Below are positions 1 through 60,138 of a stretch of DNA of 64,000 bases, piece by piece; position 1 is the stretch's first letter; each line of letters opens with the position of its first letter. The stretch covers positions 124,001-188,000 of IMG/VR virus record IMGVR_UViG_3300030041_000009. One strand, 5' to 3'. The position numbers and the translations under genes were made by a program. The notes below the pieces were generated by a model. It saw only the letters and a program-made list of their open reading frames with translations, did no database searches and was not told the DNA's origin.

Positions 1-137
1 ATTTTTATTATTATTATTTATTTGATGATGATGATAATTTAATATTATTTTGTGGTGAAGAAGATTTATATGAATATTTTTATACTAAACAAGAAGAAAG
101 AAAAAGAAAATTAGATAAAATAGAAAATTATGAATAA
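1..137 (+). CDS. Partial (5'-truncated) member of tandem paralog family, ends FYTKQEERKRKLDKIENYE
   Basis: Manual translation; same C-terminal block as the six downstream ORFs. Confidence 0.7.
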   Translation, partial: FYYYYLFDDDDNLILFCGEEDLYEYFYTKQEERKRKLDKIENYE

Positions 138-396
138 TTTTAATGATGGTGATAAAATATTATGTAAAAAGGATTTAACTTATTATGGTAACCATATTAT
201 AGAAGGTGATTATTATATTTTTCATGATAATATGTTTAGTGGTATTTTTAATGATTTTTACTGCTGTTATATAAGTGAATCTAATAATATATTTTCATAT
301 TATTTAACTGAACATGATTTAGTTGGTCATTTTTTTATGAAAAATGAGATTAGAAAATTAAAATTAGAAAAACTTTATGAAGAAACAGAATATTAA
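130..396 (+). CDS. Tandem paralog family protein (GDKxLCKK ... RKxKLEKL)
   Basis: Shared N- and C-terminal blocks with neighbours. Confidence 0.8.
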   Translation: MNNFNDGDKILCKKDLTYYGNHIIEGDYYIFHDNMFSGIFNDFYCCYISESNNIFSYYLTEHDLVGHFFMKNEIRKLKLEKLYEETEY

Positions 397-628
397 TGTA
401 GGAGATAGATTATTATGTAAAGAGGAGATTGATAAAATATTTATTAAAGATAAATATTATTATGTAGATGATATTAAAAATTTTTCAACTGATTATAGTG
501 AATATTTTTATGATTTAAGATCAGAATTCAATACAATATTACCATTTTTTAGTGAATCATATTTACATCAGTATTTTTATACTAAACAAGAAGAAAGAAA
601 AATCAAATTAGAAAAACTTTATGAATAA
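377..628 (+). CDS. Tandem paralog family protein
   Basis: NVGDRLLCK / FYTKQEERKIKLEKL. Confidence 0.8.
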   Translation: MKKQNINVGDRLLCKEEIDKIFIKDKYYYVDDIKNFSTDYSEYFYDLRSEFNTILPFFSESYLHQYFYTKQEERKIKLEKLYE

Positions 629-887
629 TTTTAATGAAGGTGATAAAATATTATGTAAAAAAGATTTAATAGCTAATTATAGTACACATTTTATAGAATG
701 TAAATATTATATTTATCATAAAATTCTGAATGATTCATTTAAAGGTTTTGCCTGCTGTATATTTAATGAATCTAATGGAATATATCCATATTTTTTAAAT
801 AAAAATGAATTACTAAATCATTTTTATACTAAACAAGAAGAGAGAAAAATTAAATTAGAAAAACTTTATGAAGAATCAGAATCTTAA
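621..887 (+). CDS. Tandem paralog family protein
   Basis: Close paralog of 130..396. Confidence 0.8.
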   Translation: MNNFNEGDKILCKKDLIANYSTHFIECKYYIYHKILNDSFKGFACCIFNESNGIYPYFLNKNELLNHFYTKQEERKIKLEKLYEESES

Positions 888-1140
888 TGTAGGTGATAAG
901 TTATTGTGTAAAAAAAATTTAAATGAATTATATGCAAGTTTTAATAAAAATAAATATTATATTGTTTATGATATTAAATTATTTGACAATAATACTGATT
1001 ATTGTTATTATATAGAATTTGATAAAAAAAAATATTATTCTTTTAGATATAGCGTTAGATTTTTTTATGAACATTTTTATACTAAACAAGAGGAGAGAAA
1101 AATAAAATTAGAAAAACTTTATGAAGAAACAGGATATTAA
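868..1140 (+). CDS. Tandem paralog family protein
   Basis: NVGDKLLCKK / FYTKQEERKIKLEKL. Confidence 0.8.
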   Translation: MKNQNLNVGDKLLCKKNLNELYASFNKNKYYIVYDIKLFDNNTDYCYYIEFDKKKYYSFRYSVRFFYEHFYTKQEERKIKLEKLYEETGY

Positions 1141-1387
1141 TGATGAAGATAAATTATTATGTAAAAAAAATCTTCTAGTTGGAGCAAATAAATATTTATA
1201 TGTTGATAATTATTATATTGTTATGGTAGTATACGGTCCTTATGAATATTGTTATTATTTTAATGATGAAAATGATAGAATATTACCATTTTCATTTAGC
1301 ATAAAAGAGATGTCTGAACATTTTTATACTAAACAAGAAGAAAGAAAAATTAAATTAGAAAAAATTTATGAAGAATCAGAATCTTAA
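1121..1387 (+). CDS. Tandem paralog family protein
   Basis: Same conserved termini. Confidence 0.8.
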   Translation: MKKQDINDEDKLLCKKNLLVGANKYLYVDNYYIVMVVYGPYEYCYYFNDENDRILPFSFSIKEMSEHFYTKQEERKIKLEKIYEESES

Positions 1388-1631
1388 TGTAGGAGATAAG
1401 TTATTATGTAAAAAAGATTTAACAACATCATATTCAATATATCATAAAGATAGATATTATATTGTTCATTTTATTATTAATTATGATGATGATTATCAGT
1501 ATTTGATATCTGATGATAAAAATGCTTATTCATCTTTTAAACGTGATGAAGAATATTTATATACTTATTTTTATAGAAAAAATGAGATTAGAAAAATTAA
1601 ATTGAAAAAATTGAATAATATTTTTAATTAA
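1368..1631 (+). CDS. Tandem paralog family protein
   Basis: Same conserved termini. Confidence 0.8.
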   Translation: MKNQNLNVGDKLLCKKDLTTSYSIYHKDRYYIVHFIINYDDDYQYLISDDKNAYSSFKRDEEYLYTYFYRKNEIRKIKLKKLNNIFN

Positions 1632-1696: not shown

Positions 1697-2770
1697 ATGA
1701 AAAAAGTAAAGAACATTTTATTTAAAATGGAATTAGAAGGTAATGGTGTTGTTAACTGTGATAGTAATGGACAAAAATGGATATGGAATGAAATTAGTGG
1801 TGGAAAGTATGAAACTGATAATAATTTAATATTTGCAAAAAAAAATATATATCAGAAAAGTAATGGTGAATATGATTATAAAATAAAAATTTCTAGTAAT
1901 TGTTTAAGACATAATATTTTTATTGATGATATTCCATTTCAATCTCCAAATATATTGCATAATAATTATTTACTTGTGTCAATGTTGGCTTCTCCTGCAA
2001 TTATAAATAGAGGTCATTTATTTGCATTGAATGAAGATGAGATTGATAAAACAATTAGAAGAAAAAGTGTTTTATGTATAATTGACGCTGAACAAACAAA
2101 TAATTGTAAATCAAAAATAGAACTTATGACAGTTAGTGGTGAAAAAATAAGTGATACTTCATTATTTAACAAAGAAACTGTAGGAGATATAACATATGAG
2201 ACTGATGGTAATATTGATTTAATGCAAATGCAATTTATTAGTTGTTCTAAAAATTTAGATCGATTAGCATTCAATCCAGATTTATTTCCTTTATATTCAG
2301 AATTATTGAAAAAAAGATTACCATCATTTAATTCGGAATTAAAATATTATAGGATTACAAATAGTGTTGTTGAATTACCAGAATATGGTTTTTTATTATC
2401 CAATACAGATGTTGTTGAACTAACAAAAAATCTATTATATAAAATGCTAAAAATGAATATTTATAAATCTGGATCTAGTGTTGTTACGTCTAAACTTAAA
2501 ATTAAATTAGTATATGACGTATTTAATGATAAAAAAAATAATTCTGATGGATGGATTGAATTAACAAAAGATGTTATAGATAATTTAAATTTTGAAAATG
2601 AAAATTTTTATACTGAATATGATTTTGAAAATGCAAAAACTTTAGATATAGAATTGTCAGATAAGAGATCTATTATAATTAAAAAAAGAATAGATGCTAA
2701 ATTGAAAGCTAAAGATGATAAAAAAGAAAAAAAAGAAGCTAAATTAAAATCTCAAAAAGAAGCTAAATAA
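1697..2770 (+). CDS. cas7: Cas7 backbone protein, type I-F2 (Cas7fv)-like
   Basis: Motifs GNGVVN, ISSNCLRHNIF, LAS-x4-RG, TSLFNKETVGD, QMQFISxxKxxDRxA, ExGxLL match the recalled Shewanella Cas7fv pattern; next to cas6 and array. Confidence 0.85.
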   Translation: MKKVKNILFKMELEGNGVVNCDSNGQKWIWNEISGGKYETDNNLIFAKKNIYQKSNGEYDYKIKISSNCLRHNIFIDDIPFQSPNILHNNYLLVSMLASPAIINRGHLFALNEDEIDKTIRRKSVLCIIDAEQTNNCKSKIELMTVSGEKISDTSLFNKETVGDITYETDGNIDLMQMQFISCSKNLDRLAFNPDLFPLYSELLKKRLPSFNSELKYYRITNSVVELPEYGFLLSNTDVVELTKNLLYKMLKMNIYKSGSSVVTSKLKIKLVYDVFNDKKNNSDGWIELTKDVIDNLNFENENFYTEYDFENAKTLDIELSDKRSIIIKKRIDAKLKAKDDKKEKKEAKLKSQKEAK

Positions 2771-2780
2771 TTCTAATAAT

Positions 2781-3680
2781 ATGGAATATTTTTTAAAATT
2801 GTCATTTAAAGATGCTGGATTTTTTGAAAAAGCAACTAATAATCAAAAACCTAGTATAAGTGTTCATCAAATAAGTAACATGCTGCATGTTTTAATGGGT
2901 GAACGTCCAAGTCCAACATATAGAGATACATTAATTAAACCTATATCAGATATATTTAATATAGCTAATTTAGCTTATATAAAAATAGATACAACAAGAT
3001 TTTTAAATAAATCTAGTGGTAAAATGTGTTATATGAATGAGTTTATACAAACAAATAAATTTGCTTATGATAGCTATAGAGATAAAAAAAGAAGTTTTAT
3101 TTATTGGGAAAATCTAGAATGTTATTTAACTACTGATCTATTTATAGAAATGATTAATTTATTTAATAATATATTAGGTTATGATGTTAAATCAAAACCT
3201 GCAATGTATATAATAAAAGAGATTATTACATATTATAGTAGTTCTAAATTAGTTATAGATATTAATAATGAAATAAAAAATAATAGCAAAATAAAATTTG
3301 CAAATTTCATTAAACAATATAATGATAATTCTGATTTTACAATTTTTTGTAAAAAATTAGTTAAAAATAATAAAACTCCAATTGCAAATCTTCTTATTGG
3401 TATTGTAAATCAATCAGCAATAACAATTGGTCAAAATCCAAAAACTACATTAACAAATATTAGAGGAATTGATAATATTACAAAAATTAGTGGTTCTATA
3501 ATAATTCCTTTAACATCAGAATATGTTGACAAAATTAAAAATTCAAAAGGTTGTGCAACGTTATTAGATGGAGGATTTGTTTGGATAGAAGATTTGATAA
3601 ATGAAGATGAAATGATTGAAAATGATTTAGATAGTTATATTAATATTAATAAATTAGAAGAATATGAGAATAAAAATTGA
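2781..3680 (+). CDS. cas5: Cas5, type I-F2 (Cas5fv)-like
   Basis: Between cas7 and cas6; MLHVLMGER and TKISGSIII..LLDGGFVWI resemble Cas5fv N- and C-terminal RRM elements; ~300 aa with central helical insert. Confidence 0.7.
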   Translation: MEYFLKLSFKDAGFFEKATNNQKPSISVHQISNMLHVLMGERPSPTYRDTLIKPISDIFNIANLAYIKIDTTRFLNKSSGKMCYMNEFIQTNKFAYDSYRDKKRSFIYWENLECYLTTDLFIEMINLFNNILGYDVKSKPAMYIIKEIITYYSSSKLVIDINNEIKNNSKIKFANFIKQYNDNSDFTIFCKKLVKNNKTPIANLLIGIVNQSAITIGQNPKTTLTNIRGIDNITKISGSIIIPLTSEYVDKIKNSKGCATLLDGGFVWIEDLINEDEMIENDLDSYININKLEEYENKN

Positions 3681-4368
3681 ATTTACAGAAAATAAAACAT
3701 TGGTACCGATTAAGAATCAATCATATATTAATTATTATATACACAAATGTCTTGGAGTTAATAATAAATATCATGATTCTAAAAATGATTACTCTATATC
3801 ATCTTTATATGGTGGAAACCTAACTGAAGATAAGTTACATTTATCATTTAAGAATGGAGGAATTATTGTAGTAACTTCAAAAAATGAAGAATTTTTGAAT
3901 GATTTAATAAGTGGAGTGATGTCTAATCAAGATTTAAATTGGGGAATGAAATTTAATAAAATTAATTTTATCTTTGAAAAATTTATAAATGGATGGAATC
4001 ATTTCGCAACATTATCTCCATTTATTATTAGAAAGCATATTAATAAAAAGAAATATACTTATTCAACTTTAAATGATTCTGATTTCGTATATATTGTAAA
4101 AAACCATATTATAAAAAAATTGAGTAAAATTTATAACGGTATTAATTTAAAAGATTTTGATGTTAAAATAATAAATCATCCTTCACATAAAGTAAAGAAA
4201 ATAATGGTTAAAAATGTCAAAAATGAAGCTAATCAATGTCACATTAGTATATTTTGTTCATCTGATGTGGCAGAAAAAATTTATAATTTAGGTATAGGAC
4301 AATCAACTGGTTCTGGATTTGGTACAATTTATAAAACAGAAAATAAAGATAAATATAAATTAGTATGA
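3664..4368 (+). CDS. cas6: CRISPR-associated endoribonuclease Cas6 (canonical, non-Cas6f)
   Basis: C-terminal Gly-rich loop GIGQSTGSGFG, YSISSL and TLSPFII motifs; abuts array leader. Confidence 0.92.
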   Translation: MRIKIEFTENKTLVPIKNQSYINYYIHKCLGVNNKYHDSKNDYSISSLYGGNLTEDKLHLSFKNGGIIVVTSKNEEFLNDLISGVMSNQDLNWGMKFNKINFIFEKFINGWNHFATLSPFIIRKHINKKKYTYSTLNDSDFVYIVKNHIIKKLSKIYNGINLKDFDVKIINHPSHKVKKIMVKNVKNEANQCHISIFCSSDVAEKIYNLGIGQSTGSGFGTIYKTENKDKYKLV

Positions 4369-4469
4369 TAAAAATGAATAAATATAATGATATACGTATA
4401 TTAATAACTCATTTTTATTTATTAATATATACTATAAATAACTCAATATCAATTAATTATAAATATCCT
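4369..4469 (+). promoter_or_regulatory. AT-rich CRISPR leader
   Basis: Between cas6 and the first perfect repeat; repeat variants accumulate at the far end; contains TAATATATAC (4423-4432), like other putative phage promoters. Confidence 0.7.
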
Positions 4470-6930
4470 GATATTATTTATATAAATCCGTAAGGGAGTC
4501 TCAACCAATGAATTGATGTCTATCCTGTTCTGCTAGATATTATTTATATAAATCCGTAAGGGAGTCTCAACTCTAGCTGTTCAATCTCTTTAAATAGATT
4601 TGATATTATTTATATAAATCCGTAAGGGAGTCTCAACATAGTGCAATTACTTATTCTAACATAACAGGATATTATTTATATAAATCCGTAAGGGAGTCTC
4701 AACAAATAAAATGATTGACTTTCAATTATATCAGATATTATTTATATAAATCCGTAAGGGAGTCTCAACATATGTTATATATATGTATTTAATTTGTCGA
4801 TATTATTTATATAAATCCGTAAGGGAGTCTCAACGAGCGTCAGTCAATGTTGAATTCGCTTTTGATATTATTTATATAAATCCGTAAGGGAGTCTCAACA
4901 CATATTGCTTATTTACATTAAATACGCTAGATATTATTTATATAAATCCGTAAGGGAGTCTCAACTATAGTCAATTAAGAAAAGAGTTAATCGGTGATAT
5001 TATTTATATAAATCCGTAAGGGAGTCTCAACACATATTGCTTATTAGAATCAAATACGCTAGATATTATTTATATAAATCCGTAAGGGAGTCTCAACATA
5101 TTTCTACAAATCATTCAAAGAAGAAATGATATTATTTATATAAATCCGTAAGGGAGTCTCAACAAGTGTAGCCAGAAAAAATGGGAAAAGTGCGATATTA
5201 TTTATATAAATCCGTAAGGGAGTCTCAACGAACCCTATTAATGACATTTTTAGTGCAATGATATTATTTATATAAATCCGTAAGGGAGTCTCAACAAAGC
5301 AGAGCAGGAAAAGAAGTGATTATATGATATTATTTATATAAATCCGTAAGGGAGTCTCAACAGTTGATGAAAAAAATAGGGAGGTTATAGGATATTATTT
5401 ATATAAATCCGTAAGGGAGTCTCAACAATGAATTAAAGGCAACCGAAGTTCTTGATGATATTATTTATATAAATCCGTAAGGGAGTCTCAACGAATTACT
5501 ACGTAAAACAAAAAGTGATTCAGATATTATTTATATAAATCCGTAAGGGAGTCTCAACTTATCATATTTAATAAATATAGTAATATAAGATATTATTTAT
5601 ATAAATCCGTAAGGGAGTCTCAACAAAGGAAGTGATATTATTTCAAATACAAAAGATATTATTTATATAAATCCGTAAGGGAGTCTCAACGAAGGTGGTG
5701 CCAGCACATCTATTAATAAGATATTATTTATATAAATCCGTAAGGGAGTCTTAACAAGGTATCAATTCTTTTTCTTAATTGGTAAGATATTATTTATATA
5801 AATCCGTAAGGGAGTCTCAACCCTGATTTTCTTGTAAAGATTTTCAAATAAGATATTATTTATATAAATCCGTAAGGGAGTCTCAACGGTGATTATACAG
5901 ATTTAGAATTAGAATTAGATATTATTTATATAAATCCGTAAGGGAGTCTCAACAGAGAAACAGTTTTAGTTTTAGGTACAACAGATATTATTTATATAAA
6001 TCCGTAAGGGAGTCTCAACATTGATTGATATTCAGTTATAAAATAATTTGATATTATTTATATAAATCCGTAAGGGAGTCTCAACGGTGTAACTCCAATT
6101 TTCACAGATGATTTTGATATTATTTATATAAATCCGTAAGGGAATCTCAACTTCTTACCAGTTGAATATTCAGAGTATTTAGATATTATTTATATAAATC
6201 CGTAAGGGAATCTCAACTATAGAAAAGGAGGGAAGACACTTGTTAAAGATATTATTTATATAAATCCGTAATGGAGTCTCAACAATGAATTACAACGGTG
6301 AATTCTGTATGCAGATATTATTTATATAAATCCGTAAAGGAGTCTTAACAGTTTATGATTTGCAGCATATTCAGATAATGATATTATTTATATAAATCCG
6401 TAAGGGAGTCTCAACAAATCAAATGATCATTTAGATGACAGTTTAGATATTATTTATATAAATCCGTAATGGAGTCTCAACATATATAGAAGAAAAACAA
6501 ATGACAAATATTGATATTATTTATATAAATCTGTAAGGGAGTCTCAACAATAAATCTCTTTCTATTGTTTCTATAGTTGATATTATTTATATAAATCCGT
6601 AAGGGAGTCTCAACTAAAGAAGAAAAAATAATTCTGAATGATAAGATATTATTTATATAAATCCGTAAGGGAATCTCAACTTCTCTTTCTATTTTTGAAA
6701 AAAATGATAAGATATTATTTATATAAATCCGTAAGGGAGTCTCAACATGATTTAGAATTTATTACATTAAGTGAAGATATTATTTATATAAATCCGTAAG
6801 GGAGTCTCAACGACGAACAAGGTCGCACAGAAGTCGAATTCGATATTATTTATATAAATCCGTAAGGGAATCTCAACAAAATAGTGACACTATTTAAATA
6901 TGTGTTTATTATATTTATATAAATCAGTAA
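4470..6930 (+). CRISPR. CRISPR array: 37 full-length 36-bp repeats (GATATTATTTATATAAATCCGTAAGGGAGTCTCAAC) plus a degenerate terminal repeat at ~6907-6930; 37 spacers of 29-31 nt
   Basis: Counted directly; ~66-bp period; point variants only from repeat 20 onward. Confidence 0.99.
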
Positions 6931-6996
6931 TTAAATTTATGATTTATATTATAAATAATTAAAAAATTATTTTTATTCACAATTAAAATAAAAAAT

Positions 6997-9294
6997 ATGA
7001 AATTAGAAGAAATTGTATCAAATAGTAGTGGAATATCATTAATAACTCATTCAAAAGCAGTTAAAAAAATAGGAATGATGTTATCAAAAAAGTTATCATT
7101 AAATGAAGACCTTGAAAAACAAATTTCAATAGCTTGTTTATTGCATGATTTAGGTAAATGTAATTTAGATTTTCAAAATTATATAAAATCAAAAAGTAAA
7201 ACAATTTCTTTTATTAATTCTCCAATATTTCATCATGAAATAAGTTGGGCATTTGTGTCATGTATTTTAAATAATGATGAATATAGATATTCTTTAGATT
7301 CAATATATTGGCATCATTCTAAACCAAAAATAAATTATATAAGTAATGATAATATATCATTAATTTTAAGTGATATGTGTGATGATGATAAAAAAAATAT
7401 TTTATCAATGTATAATTTTTTAATGAATGAAAATATATTATTTGAAGATATAAATTTTGAAAAATCTATCAATACTCCATTATATTATTTAAATGAACCA
7501 AATAGTTTAACAAATTCTAAAAATTCATTAGTAAGATCTTGTGTTATAACTGCTGATAGACTTGTATCAGCATCAGATCAAGAAAAAATATTGTATGATG
7601 ATGATTATTGTGAAGAATTAATAAACAATTTATCATATAAAGATACTAAAGTATATAGCAAACCTATTAATTATGATTCTATTCGTTTTGATTCTCAAGT
7701 TGATTACGCAAATCAATCATTAAATAATCGAACTACAATAATGAAAGCCCCAGCCGGTTTTGGTAAAACATTATTGGGGTTATTATGGTCATTAAAATCT
7801 AATAAAAAATTAATATGGGTATGCCCTAGAAATATTATTGCTGAAAATGTATATAATTCTGTTTTACAAGAATTAAAAAATATATCAGTTGAATTATCAG
7901 TTGAGTTATATTTAACAGGTAATAGACAGAAAACAAATAATGAAAACACTAAAGAATTTACATCTGATATTATAATAACTAATATAGATAATTATTTATC
8001 TCCTAATGTGAATAATTCTATTAGAAATAGATTATTTGTTATTAATTATTGTGATGTGATTTTTGATGAATATCATGAATTAATTAAAGATGATGCACTA
8101 TTTGCATGTTTTATTAATATCATGAAATCTAGACATATGTTAACAAATAGTCACACATTATTATTAAGTGCTACACAAACTATAATGGAATATTTATGGG
8201 ATGGAACAAATATAGATAAAAAAACTAAAATTTTACCAAATAAAAATTCTCATTATACATCTGCACATAATGGTAAATATTTGATTAATTATATTGATGA
8301 TATTGATACAATAACTAATGAAAAAGATTCAGTTGTTATTATGAATTCTATTTCAAATTCTCAAAGATTATATTGTTATAAAAAAGGCGATATTTTAATA
8401 CATAGTAGATATATAGATTCTGATAAAGAAAAAATAATGAATAAAATTATTCATTTATATGGCAAAGAAAATAAAAATATTTTGAATAAAGATAGTATTA
8501 TATCAGCACCTATTTTACAAGCATCTATGGATATATCATTTTTAAATTTAACAGATAGTGTGATGTCTCCAGAAACTACTTTACAAAGAATAGGTCGATG
8601 TGATAGGTGGGGACATTTTTATTATAAAAAAAATAAAACTCCAAAAATAAATTTATTTTTTAATGAAAATAAAAGTGAATTTAGAAACTCAGAAAACACT
8701 AGTATATCAAATCAATATGATTTAGAATTAAATAAATTATGGATTTCATTTATTAAAAAACATATTATTAACGGAAATTTATATTCAATAAATGAATTAT
8801 ATGAATATTATAATATGTTTAATAATGAAAATAATGAAAATTTAAAAAAGTTTATCACATCTAAACTAAAAACAAGTTTATTAAATTTATGTAAAATTGA
8901 ACCGTATAAGATGATGGAGAAATCTAAAAACAATACAATTAAAAATAATAATACTAAATTAAGAAGTGGAGGAGATATATATTGTATATATAAATATGCA
9001 AAAAAAAGACAAATGACGGACTCATTTAGTGTAGATTTTAATCGAGATATTAAAAAATCTGAACCAATAACAGGTTTAGATAGTAAAATTAAGAGAATAA
9101 TAAAGAATATTATAAAAATTAAGGATGATAGATTTTTTTATAATAAATATTCGTTATTTAAAAATAATCAATATACTTTACCTATACTTAAAGATTATGC
9201 CAGGAAAAAAGAAACCCCATATATTGCATTTGATAAAGTTTATTGTGAAAAATTAGGATTAGTAAAAAATGATATTTACGATAATTTAATATAA
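6997..9294 (+). CDS. cas3: Cas3 HD nuclease-helicase (no N-terminal Cas2 fusion)
   Basis: HD motifs HS, LLHDLGK, HHE, WHH, AD; SF2 motifs APAGFGKT, DEYH, SAT, HSR, QRIGRCDR; follows array. Confidence 0.95.
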   Translation: MKLEEIVSNSSGISLITHSKAVKKIGMMLSKKLSLNEDLEKQISIACLLHDLGKCNLDFQNYIKSKSKTISFINSPIFHHEISWAFVSCILNNDEYRYSLDSIYWHHSKPKINYISNDNISLILSDMCDDDKKNILSMYNFLMNENILFEDINFEKSINTPLYYLNEPNSLTNSKNSLVRSCVITADRLVSASDQEKILYDDDYCEELINNLSYKDTKVYSKPINYDSIRFDSQVDYANQSLNNRTTIMKAPAGFGKTLLGLLWSLKSNKKLIWVCPRNIIAENVYNSVLQELKNISVELSVELYLTGNRQKTNNENTKEFTSDIIITNIDNYLSPNVNNSIRNRLFVINYCDVIFDEYHELIKDDALFACFINIMKSRHMLTNSHTLLLSATQTIMEYLWDGTNIDKKTKILPNKNSHYTSAHNGKYLINYIDDIDTITNEKDSVVIMNSISNSQRLYCYKKGDILIHSRYIDSDKEKIMNKIIHLYGKENKNILNKDSIISAPILQASMDISFLNLTDSVMSPETTLQRIGRCDRWGHFYYKKNKTPKINLFFNENKSEFRNSENTSISNQYDLELNKLWISFIKKHIINGNLYSINELYEYYNMFNNENNENLKKFITSKLKTSLLNLCKIEPYKMMEKSKNNTIKNNNTKLRSGGDIYCIYKYAKKRQMTDSFSVDFNRDIKKSEPITGLDSKIKRIIKNIIKIKDDRFFYNKYSLFKNNQYTLPILKDYARKKETPYIAFDKVYCEKLGLVKNDIYDNLI

Positions 9295-9386: not shown

Positions 9387-11339
9387 ATGGTAAATAATAA
9401 CATTATTAGTGTTAAAGCTAAAAGAAATTTAATTAATGGTCAACTTACTAAAAATAATAAACCATACGTAAGAAAATTTGATTTTAGTCGTTATAGCAAT
9501 GATCAATTAGTTGATGCTTTATATAGTAAGAAATGGAATACTAATCGAAAAAAAGCACTTATTGCAATTAATAAATTAATAGATATTAGAATTAAAAATG
9601 ATAAATGTACTAAATATGATATTGAAAATCTAAAAGATATTGTATATAATAAAAAACACCAATTAATAAAATCTGCTAATAGTAATAGTAAAACAACTAC
9701 CACCACCACAACTATTCCAGCAAATACTAATTTAGCTCATAGTATAAAATTTCGTATTAATAAATTGATTTCTGAAATATATCGTCTAACTGGCATCAAA
9801 TTAGAAAAATTAAATAGAACTGATAATATTAATGATAAATCACACGTATTTGATGATCAGATTTTTGCATCATTAAGTTGCATATATAATATGTTATCAT
9901 CAAAACTTAATTCAAAACATAGTAGGTATAATATGTTAACTGCAGAAACTCAAGCAGGTAAAACTGGTGTTGTACGTAATATAATATATTTATTAGAAAC
10001 TTATCAAGAATTAAGAGAATATCTAAATTTGAAATTTAGAAGTAGTGTATTAATAACTCCAATGTGTGATAATTCAAATAAAGAACAATTAAAAACTGAC
10101 ATATCTCATGGAGAGTGTCGGCAAGATGATCAAAAAATATTAAAGAGGAATGGTATTATGCATAATCCAGATTTAATTCGTTGGTCAAGAAAAAATAAAG
10201 TAGGTGATTTAAATAATTGTATTATATTTATTGATGAAGCTCATTTAGCATCAAATGTTGATAGTGCTATGAATAGTTATCTTCAAAAAAATGGTATAAA
10301 TTTAAATGGTTCAACTGATTTATCAAAAAAAAATATTTTCTTATTTTCTATATCAGCAACTCCGTATGAAGAACATGTTGGTAATATTTTATATAAAAGA
10401 AAGAACACTATTGAATTATCTCACGGACCTAATTACAAAGGCTTAGAATATTTTTTAAAAAATAATTTTTTAAGAGAATCATTTGATTTATCAACAACAG
10501 AAGGTGAAAAACATTTTATAAATGAAGCAGAAAGCTTTAATAATAAAATAGGATATTATATTGTTAGAATAAATAAAAATACAAATACAAATAATCTAAT
10601 ACCTGATGGATTTAAAACTTTGACATATTATGAGAAAGATAAAGAAGTTATTAATGATGTATTAAAAAATGCACCAGATGCTCCTACCATAATATTTATT
10701 AAGGAGAAAATGAAGCAATCATATCAATTAGAGAAAGAAAATATTGTAATGTTATTTGATAGAACTACAGTTAATGATTCTACATATAGAACAAGTTTTA
10801 TTGTTCAAAGTTTTGCAGGTAGATCATGTGGATATCATAATTATAATTTTATAATTTATACAGAAATAAAACACATCAAACTTCATCTTTCATATTTAAA
10901 AAATAAATATAATGTTCCTCCATGTAAACATGTAATTAAGAAAAATAAATTTAATTTTAAAAATGGTATAAAAGAACAAGCTTCATCATATAGTGATCAA
11001 AATGATTCATCACATACAAATGATTTTTCATTAAAAATTGTACATAATACACCGAATGAAGGTTATATAGAATTAAATAATAATATCATAACAATATATT
11101 TAGATAAAGATAAAAATTTAGTATTATCTAAAAAATCAAAAGTAGAAACAAATTTTCTTGCATCATATATTGAAGATTATGTTGTTATTTCTGATATTAA
11201 AACTCCTTGTGCAAATTTAATTGATGTAAAAAATGCATTAACATATTACTGTCAACTTATATCATCAAAAATAACAATAAATGATATTAAAACTAAAAAT
11301 GGTAAAAAATTTATTGATTTATTAGAATTTGAATTTTAA
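9387..11339 (+). CDS. SF2 helicase-like ATPase
   Basis: TQAGKT (Walker A), IDEAH (Walker B), SATP, QSFAGRSCGY (motif VI). Confidence 0.75.
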   Translation: MVNNNIISVKAKRNLINGQLTKNNKPYVRKFDFSRYSNDQLVDALYSKKWNTNRKKALIAINKLIDIRIKNDKCTKYDIENLKDIVYNKKHQLIKSANSNSKTTTTTTTIPANTNLAHSIKFRINKLISEIYRLTGIKLEKLNRTDNINDKSHVFDDQIFASLSCIYNMLSSKLNSKHSRYNMLTAETQAGKTGVVRNIIYLLETYQELREYLNLKFRSSVLITPMCDNSNKEQLKTDISHGECRQDDQKILKRNGIMHNPDLIRWSRKNKVGDLNNCIIFIDEAHLASNVDSAMNSYLQKNGINLNGSTDLSKKNIFLFSISATPYEEHVGNILYKRKNTIELSHGPNYKGLEYFLKNNFLRESFDLSTTEGEKHFINEAESFNNKIGYYIVRINKNTNTNNLIPDGFKTLTYYEKDKEVINDVLKNAPDAPTIIFIKEKMKQSYQLEKENIVMLFDRTTVNDSTYRTSFIVQSFAGRSCGYHNYNFIIYTEIKHIKLHLSYLKNKYNVPPCKHVIKKNKFNFKNGIKEQASSYSDQNDSSHTNDFSLKIVHNTPNEGYIELNNNIITIYLDKDKNLVLSKKSKVETNFLASYIEDYVVISDIKTPCANLIDVKNALTYYCQLISSKITINDIKTKNGKKFIDLLEFEF

Positions 11340-14428: not shown

Positions 14429-15196
14429 TTAAAATTTTCTTTCACGTTCCATTCTTTTTAAAGTATCATATGGAGTTTCACCTTTTTTCATTTTATAATT
14501 ACAGCCAGTTGTACCACCTTTCCAGGTACCTTTCCTTTCACCTATATCATCACTAAATTCTATTTCAATGTCTTTACTTATTAATCTAGGAAACTTCAAC
14601 CAAGTGAACCATTTCCATCTCCATTCACGTTCTTGTACTCTAATTGTTGCTAAACAATTTTGTTCATCATCATATTTTGTGTTATATGTATACGGATATG
14701 TTTCTGAAAAAATAATATCTTTCCATTTGTTTTTATTCCAAAACTCCATATTTCTATTTTTCTTTGTTTCATTAATCCAAGTATCATTTTTAGCAAGGCA
14801 ACTTGTTCTTATCCATTCCCAATTCCAAGGTAAATAAAAAACTTTGTGTTTCATTCCACAACTAAACCATATTTTTCTTTCAAGAATATATACTCCATAT
14901 GTTGGCGCAGTACATTGATCGTAAAGAACCTTATCAAATTTTTTCTTTATTTTTATATTTTTATTAGATAAAATAGAAATTTTATCTTTTCTTTTTTCTT
15001 TAATATTTTTTTCAACTTCAACTTTTTTATAATGCTTCCAAGGTAAATATAAAAATAATTTACCCCAAATAAAATATATTTGAAGTATTGGCTTTGTATC
15101 ATAATATCCTGCTAAATGATATTGTATACTAAATCCACTCCACTCTGGAGTAAATTCAAAATATTTATTTTTAATTTCTTTTTTACTCATTATCAA
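14429..15196 (-). CDS. Trp-rich phage hypothetical protein
   Basis: ORF track; GERKGTWKGG motif. Confidence 0.7.
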   Translation of the reverse strand: MIMSKKEIKNKYFEFTPEWSGFSIQYHLAGYYDTKPILQIYFIWGKLFLYLPWKHYKKVEVEKNIKEKRKDKISILSNKNIKIKKKFDKVLYDQCTAPTYGVYILERKIWFSCGMKHKVFYLPWNWEWIRTSCLAKNDTWINETKKNRNMEFWNKNKWKDIIFSETYPYTYNTKYDDEQNCLATIRVQEREWRWKWFTWLKFPRLISKDIEIEFSDDIGERKGTWKGGTTGCNYKMKKGETPYDTLKRMERERKF

Positions 15197-16346: not shown

Positions 16347-17681
16347 ATGACACAAATAATCAAATTAAACAACCAACCTGATGACTTAATAAGTCAATTA
16401 AAAGATAAAGAATTATTAATATATGAAGATATTCAAGGATCTCAAGTATTTGTACAATGGGACGGAAATAAATTCTCAATAAGACCAAAATCAATTAATA
16501 ATACAGATCTAAATTTTGTAGATTTAGCTATACAAAAATATTATAATTTCGTATTTCAATATTTTTACACATTACCGGATTTTGTAACTAATTTATTATC
16601 AAAAACTTGGTGGTTTTGTTTTGAATATTTTCCAGATAATCAGCCAGGTAATATTGAATATAAGAAAATTCCGAAGAATAATTTAATATTAACGTGTATA
16701 GTTAAAGGTACAAAATATAAATATAATTACAATGAGATATTAGAATATGCTAAATTATTCAACGTAGATGCATTACCAGTGATATTTAAAGGTAAATTGA
16801 ATGATAAGCAGTTAGAGGTAATTAACTTGTTCTTACATACATCAAAAGAAGATTTAGATTATGTATATGGAGAATCTAATTTTGCATATTTTTTTTATAA
16901 GATATTAAATCCTCAATTAAACAATTCATTTTTAATGGATAGTTTCAATGATAATTTAGAAAAGATAATAGTTAGAATAAACGGAGATGATGAATTTTCA
17001 TTTGAGATATTAAATCCGTCGTATGAAAAAATGAATCTTGATAGTAGAACAGATTATTTAGAGAATTATTCGTTAATATTATTAAATTTCTTAGAATTTT
17101 TACAACTTATTAGTTTTGATAAAATAAAACTAAAAGAGATTACAAAAGAAGAATTATATATTGAATTAATTTCAGCAATATTTAATGATTATGTTGAGAA
17201 TATTACTAAAGAAATAAAAGATTGGAATTTATCAATACCTACATTTTTTTCAGAGGATAAATTTAAAATCAATACATTTTTATTGAAGAATGATAAAACA
17301 ATTGATTATATAAAATCTGATGATAAAATTGAGTATATTTTTAAACTTATATTGAGTTCATTTAATAAAAAATTAAAGAAGCCTATTGGCATTTTTAACG
17401 AAAAAACTTTAGAAATGTTTAATAGAGAAGTAGATAAAATTTCTATTTATTTGGATAATATGCTGAAAGTGAATCGTGAATATTTATTGAGAAATAATGA
17501 TTTATTGAATTTTAAAGATTATTTTAATGTTAATTTTAATACTGATTCAGAAAAAAATATTTATCCTGACGTAAAAAAATTAGGAGCAGAAATACCTTCA
17601 GGTGGAGAAAAAAAGAAAGAAAATCCTAAAGAAGAATTAAAAGGAGGTAAACCTTTTGATATAAAAAAAGGTAAATTTTAA
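16347..17681 (+). CDS. RNA ligase (Rnl2-like) fold protein, apparently catalytically degenerate
   Basis: YEDIQGS (motif I, K->D), FCFEY, LPVIFKG, LEKIIVR, FEILNP. Confidence 0.55.
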   Translation: MTQIIKLNNQPDDLISQLKDKELLIYEDIQGSQVFVQWDGNKFSIRPKSINNTDLNFVDLAIQKYYNFVFQYFYTLPDFVTNLLSKTWWFCFEYFPDNQPGNIEYKKIPKNNLILTCIVKGTKYKYNYNEILEYAKLFNVDALPVIFKGKLNDKQLEVINLFLHTSKEDLDYVYGESNFAYFFYKILNPQLNNSFLMDSFNDNLEKIIVRINGDDEFSFEILNPSYEKMNLDSRTDYLENYSLILLNFLEFLQLISFDKIKLKEITKEELYIELISAIFNDYVENITKEIKDWNLSIPTFFSEDKFKINTFLLKNDKTIDYIKSDDKIEYIFKLILSSFNKKLKKPIGIFNEKTLEMFNREVDKISIYLDNMLKVNREYLLRNNDLLNFKDYFNVNFNTDSEKNIYPDVKKLGAEIPSGGEKKKENPKEELKGGKPFDIKKGKF

Positions 17682-33714: not shown

Positions 33715-34689
33715 TTATTCTTCTGATGAATCAATATCAAAAAAATTGTTAGCGTCATCATCGTCATCTCCAAATGCTTCATCATTAATTTTACTAGATT
33801 TTGATTCTTTTGTTGATACATTATCATTAGATGAATTTTCAGCTTCTTTTTTAGCAAAAGATGTTTCATTACCTGAAATAATATCAAGTATTTGAGTTAC
33901 TTTAAATCTATCTTCAGAAGTCCATTCTTTTGGTTGATGATCTTCAAGATCAATTGTACGTTCCTTTAAAAACGTCATTACTTTTTCTTTAACTTTAGGA
34001 TTAGTAATTTTATTTTTTCCTGTTTTTTCATCAACTTCAATTGGAACTTTAACCAAACCTTTTGGAGTCATAATTTTAATAGGAGATACTTCTAAAAAAG
34101 TACTAGAATCATAATTAGGAAATTCTCCTAATTGCTTCATAACCAATTTGAAGTCTTTACCATTTGCCAAATCAAAAACATTACAAGCATCTGATGATAT
34201 ACCATCTTTTTGATCTTTAATTTTTTCTTTGATTTTGTAACCATAAGGATAAATTAAAATTTTGCCTTCTAAATCACGATTTTGTTCATCTTCAATTACT
34301 AAAATATAAGAATAATATTTAGTACTTCTACTAATCAAATCTGCTTTTTCAACATCTGATGCGTTTTTTGAGTTCTTCAACTTCCAGTACATAGTACAAA
34401 TATCACATTTATCTGTGAAATTTTTCATACAATCATAGTAACCTTGAAGTTCTGGATGATTTTTAAAATCAACATAATGCTGATGTTTTTCAATTGCTGA
34501 TAATGATACTTTACCATCTTTTGTAAGATTTGGTAAAAATCTAATAGTAGAAACATAACCTTTCTTTTTGTCTGTAATTTTAGGACGATAAATACCATCT
34601 AAACTACCACCTTTTTTTTCTAGAAAATCTAGAGTTTCGCTTTGTGCGTCAATTGCGTCGAATAAATCGACATTTTCAAATTCTTTCAT
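33715..34689 (-). CDS. Single-stranded DNA-binding protein, T4 gp32-like
   Basis: IRFLP, H/C-x-C-x2-C Zn ligands, FDLANGKDF, NYDSSTF, acidic C-terminal tail. Confidence 0.85.
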   Translation of the reverse strand: MKEFENVDLFDAIDAQSETLDFLEKKGGSLDGIYRPKITDKKKGYVSTIRFLPNLTKDGKVSLSAIEKHQHYVDFKNHPELQGYYDCMKNFTDKCDICTMYWKLKNSKNASDVEKADLISRSTKYYSYILVIEDEQNRDLEGKILIYPYGYKIKEKIKDQKDGISSDACNVFDLANGKDFKLVMKQLGEFPNYDSSTFLEVSPIKIMTPKGLVKVPIEVDEKTGKNKITNPKVKEKVMTFLKERTIDLEDHQPKEWTSEDRFKVTQILDIISGNETSFAKKEAENSSNDNVSTKESKSSKINDEAFGDDDDDANNFFDIDSSEE

Positions 34690-59122: not shown

Positions 59123-59266
59123 ATGAAAGTTCAAAAAACATTTACAATAGAAAAAGAAATATCAAAAGAATTTGATAAGATTTCAAAAGAGAAATCAATT
59201 AATAAATCATTATTCATAGAAAATGCTATGAAAGATTTTATTGAAAAAATAATAAATCAAAAATGA
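59123..59266 (+). CDS. Ribbon-helix-helix DNA-binding protein
   Basis: KTFTIE beta-strand, NKSLFIENAMKDF helix. Confidence 0.65.
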   Translation: MKVQKTFTIEKEISKEFDKISKEKSINKSLFIENAMKDFIEKIINQK

Positions 59267-60138
59267 TTATTGGTGTATATAAAATAACAAATTTAATAAA
59301 TAATAAATGTTATGTTGGATCATCAATAAATGTTAAAGGAAGATTTACTCAACATAAGAATCAATTAAAAAAGAATAAACATCATTCTATTAAATTACAA
59401 AGAGCTTATGATAAATATGGTATTGAAAATTTTACATATACAATTTTAGAAGAATGTAGTATTAATGAAATTTTAATTAGAGAACAATATTATATTGATT
59501 TTTTTGATTGCTGTAAAAATGGATATAATATTTTACCTAATGCTGGACATAATTTAGGAATGAAACATAGTGACAAAACAAAAGATATATTAAGGCAAAA
59601 AAGTATTGGAAACAAAAGTCACTTTGGTATAAAACAAAGTGAAGAAACAAAAAAAATAATATCAGAAAAATTAAAAGGAATAAATATTTCAGATGAAACT
59701 AAATTAAAAATGAGTAAATCACAAAAAGGTAGAATAACAAGTGATGAAACTAAATTAAAATTAAGTATATTAAATAAAGGTAAAAAAATGAGTGATGAAG
59801 CTAAATTAAAAATAAGCATTTCAAAAAAAGGTAAACAGCAAAGTAAAGAAACTATTGAAAAAAGGGTAAAAAAGAATACTGGTCAAAAAAGAACAGATGA
59901 AGTTAAATTGAAAATGAGTAAAGCTATGATTGGTGTAAAAAAAAGACCTATGACTGAAGAATATAAATTATTAAGATCTAAAAAAGTTGCTCAAATATCA
60001 GAAAGTGGAGAAATAATTAAAGAATTTAATAGTGTAAAAAATTGTGCGTCGTATTTTAATACTAAAACTAATAGAATATGGGAAGTATTATCAGGTAACA
60101 AAAAATCTTATAAAAATAATTATTTCAAATATTTATAA
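59263..60138 (+). CDS. GIY-YIG homing endonuclease with NUMOD3 repeats
   Basis: GVYKITN..CYVGSS..R; repeated SDETKLKMS; C-terminal NUMOD1-like HTH. Confidence 0.92.
   Translation: MIIGVYKITNLINNKCYVGSSINVKGRFTQHKNQLKKNKHHSIKLQRAYDKYGIENFTYTILEECSINEILIREQYYIDFFDCCKNGYNILPNAGHNLGMKHSDKTKDILRQKSIGNKSHFGIKQSEETKKIISEKLKGINISDETKLKMSKSQKGRITSDETKLKLSILNKGKKMSDEAKLKISISKKGKQQSKETIEKRVKKNTGQKRTDEVKLKMSKAMIGVKKRPMTEEYKLLRSKKVAQISESGEIIKEFNSVKNCASYFNTKTNRIWEVLSGNKKSYKNNYFKYL

What the first reader, a model, noticed from the sequence alone, without database searches (positions are those of the whole stretch)
5164..5193. Spacer 11 encodes a terminase Walker A motif (SVARKNGKS)
Seen: AGT GTA GCC AGA AAA AAT GGG AAA AGT translates to S-V-A-R-K-N-G-K-S. 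Knowledge: RKNGK(S/T) is the signature P-loop of a large family of phage terminase large subunits. Spacer 27 (6218-6247) reads YRKGGKTLVK, another possible P-loop, but this is weaker. Inference: the system targets competing phages or prophages at highly conserved sites.
Basis: partly seen in the sequence, partly recalled or inferred. Interest (0 to 1): 0.7.

Follow-up and report, generated by a model that had tools for sequence, protein, structure and literature searches.

The report
Phage CRISPR spacer from a terminase gene
One spacer in a CRISPR array carried by a huge peat-soil phage was copied from the ATP-binding loop of another, small phage's DNA-packaging (terminase) gene, an ordinary example of the already known phage-against-phage use of CRISPR.

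Summary
Spacer 11 (5164-5193) lies between perfect 36-nt repeats and reads SVARKNGKS in frame 2.

The peptide is the P-loop of the PF03354/PF20441 terminase large subunit (TerL) family. It never occurs in 429,016 six-frame residues of the carrier genome, nor in 3000 shuffles of the spacer pool.

No exact protospacer exists in IMG/VR. The best non-array match is L095, a 6.2-kb, 39% GC viral contig. It is 28/30 identical, with 26 contiguous bases from spacer position 1. Named relatives of that TerL are in Bacteroidota.

The carrier is a 22% GC huge phage, a 214-kb fragment related to the 634-735 kb Mahaphage genomes predicted to infect Bacteroidetes. It has a minimal type I-F2-like system (Cas7fv, Cas5fv-like, Cas6, Cas3). 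No Cas1 was found, and the array is identical in all sister contigs.

- Spacer 27 has no terminase match.
- No shared PAM could be derived.
- A TerL 82% identical in protein already has 9 DNA mismatches, so the conserved motif gives no breadth.

This is a new member of a known kind.

The parts
5164..5193 (+). Spacer 11. It is a copy of the Walker A (P-loop) coding stretch of a PF03354-type terminase large subunit and reads (K)SVARKNGKSA in frame 2.
   Evidence: Searches give the sequence and frame. Searches give the best protospacer, L095:5385-5414(-), at 28/30 with mismatches at spacer positions 27 and 29. One search shows that the L095 gene is TerL (PF03354 8.8e-35, PF20441 7.5e-42).
4470..6941 (+). 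CRISPR array: 37 repeats of 36 nt plus a degenerate terminal repeat, with 37 spacers of 29-31 nt. Repeat mutations accumulate towards the 6877 end.
   Evidence: Spacer order is identical in 9 sister contigs. The repeat has only a weak 3-bp hairpin followed by 8 nt. The hairpin position is conserved in the related array of L144.
4369..4469 (+). Putative leader (12% GC), lying between cas6 and the first, perfect repeat.
   Evidence: One search gives the GC content. One search shows that perfect repeats sit at this end and degenerate ones at the other. L144 has the same layout.
1697..2770 (+). Cas7fv-like backbone subunit.
   Evidence: NCBIfam Cas7fv 2.1e-19, below the curated cut-off. PADLOC Cas7fv 4.4e-13. 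PDB 5o6u_C Cas7fv 1e-7.
2781..3680 (+). Cas5fv-like subunit. No sequence-family hit; assigned by fold.
   Evidence: AlphaFold model with pLDDT 92. The best structural matches are Cas5fv 5o6u_F (Z 8.4) and the type I-F2 chain 9g44_B (Z 7.5), followed by Cas5 of types I-E, I-B, I-A and I-C.
3664..4368 (+). Cas6 endoribonuclease, Cas6b-like rather than Cas6f.
   Evidence: Pfam Cas_Cas6_C 4.8e-12. TIGR01877 6.1e-22. PADLOC Cas6b 6.5e-36.
6997..9294 (+). Stand-alone Cas3 with an N-terminal HD nuclease and an SF2 helicase. There is no Cas2 fusion.
   Evidence: PADLOC Cas3fv 6.5e-66, matching profile positions 320-903 of 951.
6218..6247 (+). Spacer 27. It reads YRKGGKTLVK, has no identified target, and also contains AAGGAGG.
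   Evidence: One search gives the translation and the 0.22 chance of a GK[ST]. One search found no non-array match in IMG/VR.
4638..4667 (+). Spacer 3. It is the only spacer with an exact environmental protospacer, which lies in an AT-rich open frame of unknown function.
   Evidence: a 543-nt contig of RNA run X18 and a contig of DNA run X8 carry it 30/30 between non-repeat flanks; the 90 nt have one open frame and 28% GC.

Best explanation
Spacer 11 is a genuine CRISPR spacer. It was copied from the Walker A coding stretch of the large terminase gene of a small tailed phage or prophage with a TerS(Terminase_4)-TerL-portal packaging module. That phage is closely related to IMG/VR contig L095, whose terminase relatives sit in Bacteroidota genomes.

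The array belongs to a 22% GC huge phage from peat. The phage is related to the 634-735 kb Mahaphage genomes, which are predicted to infect Bacteroidetes. It carries a minimal type I-F2-like effector (Cas7fv-like, Cas5fv-like, Cas6) plus a stand-alone Cas3. No adaptation genes were found.

Inferred mechanism:
1. The array is transcribed from the cas6-side leader.
2. Cas6 cuts the repeats and leaves an 8-nt 5' handle.
3. The crRNA-Cascade complex pairs with the template strand of the competitor's terL.
4. Cas3 degrades that genome, removing a co-infecting or resident rival from the shared host.

Shown: the spacer, its frame, its family of origin, the near-identical terL protospacer, the cas gene set and the phage nature of the carrier. 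Inferred: transcription direction, interference activity, the PAM, the shared host, and the benefit to the huge phage. That the spacer falls on a conserved motif is best read as what made it recognisable by eye, not as a targeting strategy.
For: - Sequence and frame.
- Motif absent from background: 0 in 429,016 six-frame residues and 0 in 3000 shuffles.
72 continue with S or T. 54 of those lie at residues 40-180 of open frames of at least 450 aa, and about 12 more are truncated copies of the same context.
- All 56 aligned frames carry PF03354 and PF20441.
- 117 of 120 whole-protein homologues of the L095 TerL have [AGS]RK[NG][GAS]KT at this place.
- L095 matches 28/30 in frame within TerL, flanked by TerS and portal genes. 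It is the only non-array carrier of the 22-mer core in IMG/VR.
- For another TerL with the same 16-nt core, the chance of matching 12 or more of the 14 free positions is 3.4e-5. The other 64 homologues have 6-12 mismatches, and the 82%-identical relative has 9.
- In the + orientation, both mismatches (positions 27 and 29) are distal to the 5' flank where type I PAMs lie.
- Carrier is a phage. It is an IMG/VR virus record with 30% CheckV completeness. Its gp32-like SSB and a 444-aa protein have their best or only GenBank phage hits in LR756501-4 and LR745206, which are Mahaphage genomes with predicted Bacteroidetes hosts (PMC7162821).
- Named relatives of the L095 TerL are Fibrisoma, Bacteroidales MAGs and Xanthovirga.
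- cas genes.
- No self-target in the 214-kb record, and no PF03354-type TerL in the carrier or three sister records.
- Spacer 3 has an exact protospacer in run X8, which also holds the phage.
- Precedent: huge-phage spacers targeting core structural genes of other phages (PMC7162821).
Against: - No 30/30 protospacer was found in IMG/VR. The wobble-degenerate pattern, which would also catch an exact copy, found none in JGI metagenome contigs or GTDB genomes either.
- L095 is 39% GC, whereas the spacers average 26% and the carrier is 22%.
- No run was listed for L095, and no L095-like contig was laid in four peat runs that hold the carrier. This is weak negative evidence.
- The spacer encodes GKSA, where the L095 clade has GKT[TS]. 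The true source is therefore a variant, or the spacer has drifted.
- No PAM can be defined. The flank is not the CC of type I-F.
- No Cas1 was found, and the array is identical in all sister contigs. Active acquisition by this phage is therefore not shown.
- Expression and interference were not tested.
Confidence: 0.75

Rival explanations
1. Fossil memory. The array and cas genes were captured from a bacterial host, or are inherited unchanged. Spacer 11 then records an old bacterial encounter with a temperate phage and may no longer have a living target. The 2 mismatches would be drift in the spacer or in the target.
For: - No Cas1 in four contigs of 190-256 kb.
- Spacer order is identical in 9 sister contigs, with no new leader-end spacers.
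- The array of 37 repeats is far longer than the median of six repeats for phage arrays (PMC7162821).
- Repeats carry 12 point mutations, concentrated at the old end.
- Most spacers tested have no target.
Against: - The cas genes have the carrier's own 21-22% GC.
- A diverged sister phage (Cas3 44% identical) keeps the same locus architecture with a different repeat and 18 different spacers. The arrays have therefore turned over within this phage lineage.
- Spacer 3 has an exact present-day target in a sample that also holds the phage.
- The sister contigs may simply be one population sampled repeatedly.
Confidence: 0.25
2. The spacer does come from a PF03354-type terL P-loop, but of another, AT-rich phage that has not been sampled. 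The 28/30 match to L095 would then be convergence between homologous codons.
For: - L095 is 39% GC, against a spacer mean of 26%.
- L095 was not seen in the peat runs.
- The GKSA versus GKTT difference.
- The family is huge. If about 3000 IMG/VR TerL genes share the 16-nt core, the expected number of chance matches at 28/30 or better is about 0.1. This is my extrapolation.
Against: - The per-gene probability is 3.4e-5, and only about 65 such genes were actually seen among the 116 rows returned.
- The next best homologues have 6 mismatches.
- L095 is the only non-array carrier of the 22-mer.
Confidence: 0.12
3. Deliberate conserved-site targeting. Spacers on invariant motifs are acquired or retained because escape is costly, or because one spacer covers many phages.
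For: - The P-loop residues ARKNGK are invariant or nearly so, so non-synonymous escape would be costly.
- Two spacers, 7 and 9, are variants of one site, which suggests repeated sampling of a favoured locus.
Against: - Only one of 37 spacers lies on a recognisable motif. A spacer on a famous motif is also the only kind a reader without tools can recognise, which is an ascertainment bias.
- Synonymous freedom is large: 6-12 mismatches among homologues, and 9 in an 82%-identical TerL. There is therefore no breadth, and escape by silent changes is easy.
- Spacer 27 is not supported.
- The target of spacer 3 is an unremarkable open frame.
Confidence: 0.08
4. Chance. The purine-rich 30-mer merely happens to translate into a P-loop-like peptide.
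For: AT- and purine-rich DNA readily encodes K, N and R. A GK[ST] appears in 22% of shuffled spacer sets.
Against: - 0 occurrences in 429,016 background residues and 0 in 3000 shuffles for the specific motif.
- About 92% of IMG/VR occurrences of the core that continue with S or T are terminases.
- The 26-nt contiguous identity to a terL gene.
Confidence: 0.02

Closest known systems
CRISPR arrays of huge phages with spacers against other phages (Al-Shayeb et al. 2020, PMC7162821)
   Same: The carrier is a huge phage of the Mahaphage neighbourhood. The system lacks Cas1, Cas2 and Cas4 in the DNA held. A spacer matches a core (packaging) gene of another phage. The paper accepted dashed edges of 2-3 mismatches in its target network.
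   Different: The array has 37 repeats, against a median of six in that study. The effector is type I-F2-like, which the paper's main text does not mention. The habitat is peat. The relatives in GenBank (LR7565xx) have no homologue of this Cas7 or Cas3.
Vibrio phage ICP1 type I-F CRISPR-Cas (Seed et al. 2013, as cited in PMC7162821)
   Same: It is a phage-borne type I-F-related system that a phage uses against another mobile element in the same host.
   Different: From my own knowledge, ICP1 has Cas1 and a Cas2-3 fusion, acquires spacers, and targets the PLE island rather than a phage terminase. Here no adaptation genes were found, Cas3 stands alone, the Cas6 is Cas6b-like and the repeats are 36 nt.
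Minimal type I-F2 (I-Fv) Cascade of Shewanella putrefaciens (PDB 5O6U, 9G44)
   Same: It has a Cas7fv-like and a Cas5fv-like subunit and no Cas8 or Cas11 gene. The gene order is cas7-cas5-cas6.
   Different: The Cas6 is of the Cas6b/TIGR01877 kind. Cas3 is not fused to Cas2. The repeat is 36 nt rather than 28 nt. The flanks of the two known targets are not CC. No Cas1 was found. The system is carried by a phage.
TerL_ATPase family PF03354 with TerL_nuclease PF20441 (HK97/P27-like large terminases)
   Same: The spacer-encoded peptide equals the family's P-loop. The nearest protospacer sits on that motif, in frame.
   Different: The spacer is only a 30-nt copy and not a gene. It encodes GKSA where the nearest clade has GKT[TS].

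Membership tests
Spacer derived from a PF03354-type terminase large subunit | The encoded peptide matches the family's P-loop, [VI][AGS]RKN[GA]K[ST]. | tested here: met
   The spacer reads SVARKNGKS. ARKNGK is invariant in 56 TerL (selected on the core). The motif is present in 117 of 120 homologues found by whole-protein similarity.
Spacer derived from a PF03354-type terminase large subunit | The best non-array DNA match lies inside a gene that carries the family's domains. | tested here: met
   L095:5385-5414(-) lies inside L095:4082-5707(-), which has PF03354 at 8.8e-35 and PF20441 at 7.5e-42.
Spacer derived from a PF03354-type terminase large subunit | The match is read in the same frame as the motif. 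| tested here: met
   The L095 frame gives KSVARKNGKTT at TerL residues of about 98-108.
Spacer derived from a PF03354-type terminase large subunit | An exact or 1-mismatch protospacer exists, the usual criterion for calling a target. | tested here: not met
   The best match is 28/30. The exact 30-mer occurs only in sister arrays in IMG/VR. The degenerate scans of IMG/VR, metagenome contigs and GTDB genomes gave nothing closer.
Type I-F2 (I-Fv) CRISPR-Cas | Cas7fv backbone subunit. | tested here: met
   NCBIfam Cas7fv 2.1e-19, below the equivalog cut-off. PADLOC Cas7fv 4.4e-13. PDB 5o6u_C 1e-7.
Type I-F2 (I-Fv) CRISPR-Cas | A Cas5fv subunit that replaces the large subunit. | tested here: met
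   Assigned by fold only. The model has pLDDT 92. The best matches are 5o6u_F (Z 8.4) and 9g44_B (Z 7.5), ahead of other Cas5. There is no sequence-family hit.
Type I-F2 (I-Fv) CRISPR-Cas | Cas6f endoribonuclease and a 28-nt repeat. | tested here: not met
   The Cas6 matches Cas6b/TIGR01877 models. The repeat is 36 nt.
Type I-F2 (I-Fv) CRISPR-Cas | A Cas2-Cas3 fusion and Cas1. | tested here: not met
   Cas3 starts with its HD domain and matches only positions 320-903 of the Cas3fv profile. Cas1 (PF01867) is absent from G000-G003. These records are only 27-36% complete, so the absence is not final.
Type I-F2 (I-Fv) CRISPR-Cas | A CC PAM 5' of the protospacer. | tested here: inconclusive
   The 5' flanks are CAA (spacer 11 in L095) and TTA or ATA (spacer 3). 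Read in reverse, L095 would give CC but spacer 3 would give TG. Two targets are too few.
Phage-encoded CRISPR used against competing phages | The array and cas genes lie on a phage genome. | tested here: met
   The carrier is an IMG/VR virus record. It has a gp32-like SSB and homing endonucleases. Two proteins have their best or only matches in the 634-735 kb huge phages. The cas genes have the GC content of the genome.
Phage-encoded CRISPR used against competing phages | The target is a different phage that shares the host or the sample. | tested here: inconclusive
   The target is a different, small phage. Both point to Bacteroidota, but only by inference. L095 was not detected in the peat runs. 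The target of spacer 3 does co-occur with the phage in run X8.
Phage-encoded CRISPR used against competing phages | crRNA is made and interference occurs. | not testable with these tools
   The Logan contigs break at the repeats, so the array is not covered. No small-RNA data are available.

The most novel reading that the evidence does not exclude
A Mahaphage-related huge phage lineage maintains a long CRISPR array served by a minimal I-F2-like Cascade and Cas3, with no adaptation genes of its own. The array acts as an inherited arsenal against the small temperate phages of its Bacteroidota hosts. Spacers would be loaded in trans, or only rarely. Those on functionally constrained motifs, such as the terminase P-loop, would be kept because non-synonymous escape is lethal.
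Probability: 0.12. Interest if true: 0.6.

Novelty: new member of a known kind. Interest (0 to 1): 0.38.

Why it matters
The finding gives a concrete, checkable example of phage-against-phage CRISPR targeting in peat soil. The carrier is a huge phage related to the largest known phage genomes, and its spacer was taken from the packaging ATPase of a small Bacteroidota-type phage. This links two viruses to one probable host phylum. It also provides a natural protospacer for testing a minimal I-F2-like effector that differs from the characterised ones in its Cas6 type, repeat length, PAM and unfused Cas3. It does not show a new principle, because targeting of core genes of rival phages by huge-phage arrays has been described.

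Tried and rejected
- **Self-targeting.** blastn-short of all 37 spacers against the 214-kb record gave only short AT-rich chance matches.
- **Exact spacer 11 in IMG/VR.** All 7 hits are the same array in sister contigs.
- **GenBank phages and PLSDB plasmids with the whole array as query.** Nothing significant.
- **Wobble-degenerate spacer 11 in IMG/VR, GTDB genomes and JGI metagenome contigs.** Only high-GC TerL genes with 5-9 mismatches, random hits and sister arrays. These hits confirm the peptide-family link but are not targets.
- **Degenerate scans of IMG/VR for spacers 27, 7/9, 36 and 19.** Only sister arrays.
- **Co-occurrence of L095 with the carrier.** No run was listed for L095, and nothing was laid in four peat runs.
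- **TerL of the carrier.** PF03237, PF17289 and PF03354 are absent from the records held, which are incomplete.
- **Cross-targeting between the two related huge phages.** None in the parts held. L144, L145 and L141 could not be searched as whole records.
- **Host clue from Cas3 homologues.** No taxon names were returned.
- **PAM inference.** Abandoned, because only two targets exist and their flanks disagree.
- **Repeat folding as an orientation test.** Not significant in either strand. Orientation rests on the leader, the repeat decay and the 8-nt tail after a small conserved hairpin.
- **The 650-aa gene after cas3 as a hidden Cas1.** Rejected. Its distant homologues carry ResIII or DEAD helicase domains.
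Full report
**1. Observation**

The window (21.7% GC) contains a CRISPR array on the + strand. It has 37 copies of a 36-nt repeat at 4470-6877, followed by a degenerate copy near 6906-6941. The spacers are 29-31 nt long. Repeats 1-19 are perfect. Point mutations appear from repeat 20 and concentrate at the 6877 end. The 12% GC stretch 4369-4469 next to cas6 is therefore the likely leader, and the array is probably read on the + strand.

Spacer 11 is exactly 5164-5193. In frame 2 it reads SVARKNGKS followed by an alanine codon stub. Spacer 27 (6218-6247) reads YRKGGKTLVK.

**2. Is it more than chance?**

With the array masked, the 429,016 six-frame residues of the carrier's 214-kb record contain RKNGK[ST] zero times. 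They contain GK[ST] 76 times. In 3000 shuffles of the pooled spacers, [RK][KQ]NGK[ST] never appeared, while a bare GK[ST] appeared somewhere in 22% of the shuffled sets. Spacer 11 is far outside chance. Spacer 27 is not.

**3. Is the peptide a terminase P-loop?**

In both, SVARKNGKSA lies in frame in 562- and 567-aa genes that carry TerL_ATPase (PF03354) and TerL_nuclease (PF20441). In L009 the gene upstream is a Terminase_4 small subunit. The same pattern in GTDB genomes and JGI metagenome contigs added two more such genes (L014, L021), some random hits and further sister arrays.

It gave 115 non-array occurrences:
- 72 continue with an S or T codon.
- 54 of those sit at residues 40-180 of open frames of at least 450 aa.
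- About 12 more are truncated copies of the same context.

All 56 frames that I aligned carry both terminase domains. In an independent sample of 120 whole-protein homologues of the L095 TerL, 117 have [AGS]RK[NG][GAS]KT at this position. tblastn with that TerL finds 2,779 of 50,697 GenBank phage records. One qualification applies: the family's P-loop is a deviant Walker A with V or I at the first position.

**4. The protospacer**

The exact 30-mer occurs in IMG/VR only inside the same array in seven sister contigs.

The best non-array match is L095 (IMGVR_UViG_3300033145_000197). This contig is 6,235 bp, 39% GC and 14% complete by CheckV, which suggests a genome of about 45 kb.
- Position 5385-5414 on the minus strand is identical to the spacer at 28 of 30 bases. 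There are 26 contiguous matches from spacer position 1. The mismatches are at positions 27 and 29.
- The match lies in the 541-aa TerL (PF03354 8.8e-35, PF20441 7.5e-42), between a Terminase_4 TerS gene and a portal gene.
- L095 is the only non-array carrier of the 22-nt core in IMG/VR.

The match is specific and not merely a by-product of protein conservation. The 64 other TerL genes that share the 16-nt core differ from the spacer at 6-12 positions. From their per-position match frequencies, the chance that one of them matches at least 12 of the 14 free positions is 3.4e-5. The closest protein relative (P0002 on L141, 82% identical) differs at 9 of 30 bases. Allowing for perhaps thousands of such genes in IMG/VR, I put the chance of a coincidental 28/30 match at about 0.002 to 0.1.

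Named relatives of the L095 TerL, at 46-49% identity, are from Fibrisoma, Bacteroidales MAGs and Xanthovirga. All of these are Bacteroidota.

**5. The carrier and its system**

The window is part of an IMG/VR virus record of 214,510 bp with 30% CheckV completeness. Identical Cas3 and array sequences occur on contigs of up to 346,561 bp.

A gp32-like SSB (33715-34689) and a 444-aa protein (16347-17681) have their best or only GenBank phage matches in LR756501-4 and LR745206. These are the 634-735 kb Mahaphage-clade genomes, which their authors predict to replicate in Bacteroidetes (PMC7162821). Runs that hold the cas region come mostly from peat, and also from soil, freshwater, bioreactor and permafrost samples.

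The genes around the array are:
- a Cas7fv-like protein at 1697-2770;
- a 299-aa protein at 2781-3680 with no sequence-family hit, whose confident model (pLDDT 92) is closest to Cas5fv 5o6u_F (Z 8.4) and the I-F2 chain 9g44_B (Z 7.5), ahead of other Cas5 proteins;
- a Cas6b-like Cas6 at 3664-4368;
- a stand-alone HD-helicase Cas3 at 6997-9294.

Cas1 is absent from the four records held, which are 27-36% complete. The cas genes have the carrier's own GC content. The system is therefore a phage-resident variant of the minimal type I-F2 effector. It fails several I-F2 criteria: the Cas6 type, the 36-nt repeat, the lack of a Cas2-3 fusion and the flanks that are not CC.

A diverged sister phage (L144; Cas3 44% identical) has the same architecture. 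Its repeat is related at 27 of 36 bases and keeps the small hairpin followed by 8 nt. It carries 18 different spacers. This shows that arrays have turned over within the lineage.

By contrast, the array of the present phage is identical in all nine sister loci.

**6. Other spacers**

Degenerate scans for spacers 27, 7/9 (two variants of one site), 36 and 19 returned only sister arrays. No spacer matches the carrier itself, GenBank phages or plasmids.

Laying contigs of four runs on the locus revealed, unexpectedly, an exact 30/30 copy of spacer 3 between non-repeat flanks. It occurs in a 543-nt contig of a permafrost metatranscriptome (X18) and in a soil metagenome (X8) that also holds the phage. 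The 90 nt known have 28% GC and one open frame, in the spacer's sense. This shows that at least one spacer has a living target.

The spacers average 26% GC, so most targets are probably AT-rich. At 40% GC, spacer 11 and its 39% GC match are at the upper end of that range.

**7. Mechanism**

The most likely mechanism has four steps, all inferred:
1. The array is transcribed from the cas6-side leader.
2. Cas6 processes the transcript and leaves an 8-nt 5' handle.
3. A Cas7fv-Cas5fv-Cas6 complex carrying the spacer 11 crRNA pairs with the template strand of the rival's terL.
4. Cas3 degrades that genome.

In this orientation, the two mismatches to L095 lie at the end distal to the 5' flank. From general knowledge of type I systems, not tested here, mismatches at that end are tolerated.

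The flanks of the two known targets are CAA (spacer 11) and TTA or ATA (spacer 3). They give no PAM.

**8. What is not supported**

The idea that the system aims at highly conserved sites rests on one spacer of 37, and that spacer is of the only kind a reader without tools can recognise. Conservation of the P-loop is at the protein level. At the DNA level the spacer would not reach even an 82%-identical terminase, and silent escape is easy.

Spacer 27 has no terminase match. It has Y where the family has a small residue, and it contains AAGGAGG.

**9. Comparison and novelty**

Huge-phage CRISPR systems that lack adaptation genes, with spacers against core structural genes of other phages, were described in 2020 (PMC7162821). 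This case is a new member of that kind. It has some unusual features: a long array, and an I-F2-like effector that has no homologue in GenBank phages.

Interest is moderate to low. The finding is real and correctly read, but it is not surprising.

Noticed in passing
window 4638-4667 (spacer 3): An exact 30/30 protospacer between non-repeat flanks occurs in a 543-nt contig of a permafrost metatranscriptome (X18). It also occurs in a soil metagenome (X8) that holds the phage. The 90 nt known have 28% GC and one open frame in the spacer's sense. The function is unknown.
   Followed up: partly
window 4900-4929 and 5032-5061 (spacers 7 and 9): These two spacers share their first 14 and last 10 bases and differ only in the middle. 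They are variants of one target site. No target was found in IMG/VR.
   Followed up: partly
window 4708-4743 (spacer 4 positions 5-30 plus 10 nt of the repeat): A 405-nt contig of run X8 matches this stretch with 2 differences and has non-repeat flanks. It may be a spacer 4 protospacer, but the sequence is very AT-rich and the match runs into the repeat.
   Followed up: no
window 130-1631: Six tandem, overlapping paralogous ORFs of 83-90 aa lie directly upstream of cas7. They share N-terminal (MKxQNxNVGDKLLCKK) and C-terminal (FYTKQEERKIKLEKLYEE) motifs. The related phage L144 has about 17 such ORFs at the same place. Only viral hypothetical-protein clusters resemble them.
   Followed up: partly
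window 9387-11339: A 650-aa gene lies after cas3 and is conserved at the same place in the related phage (654 aa). It has no family hit itself, but distant homologues carry ResIII or DEAD helicase domains. It may be an accessory helicase of the locus.
   Followed up: partly
window 14429-15196 (- strand): A 255-aa protein matches the CBASS inhibitor Acb3 (PF25187, 3e-46). This is a counter-defence gene about 5 kb from the CRISPR locus. It is also present, next to an ankyrin-repeat gene, in the related phage L144.
   Followed up: partly
L144:8710-9932: A related huge phage (326-kb contig from the same kind of samples) has a 19-repeat array. Its repeat is 27/36 identical to this one and keeps the small hairpin plus 8-nt tail. 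It has 18 different spacers, none matching the present phage.
   Followed up: yes
window 59263-60138 and 33715-34689: A GIY-YIG/homing-endonuclease-like gene and a T4 gp32-like single-strand DNA-binding protein. The latter links the phage to the 634-735 kb Mahaphage genomes.
   Followed up: partly
L095:5415-5420 (5' flank of the protospacer): The four bases before the L095 protospacer (TCAA) resemble the last bases of the repeat (TCAAC), which made BLAST extend the match by a gapped 5 nt. This is probably coincidence.
   Followed up: no
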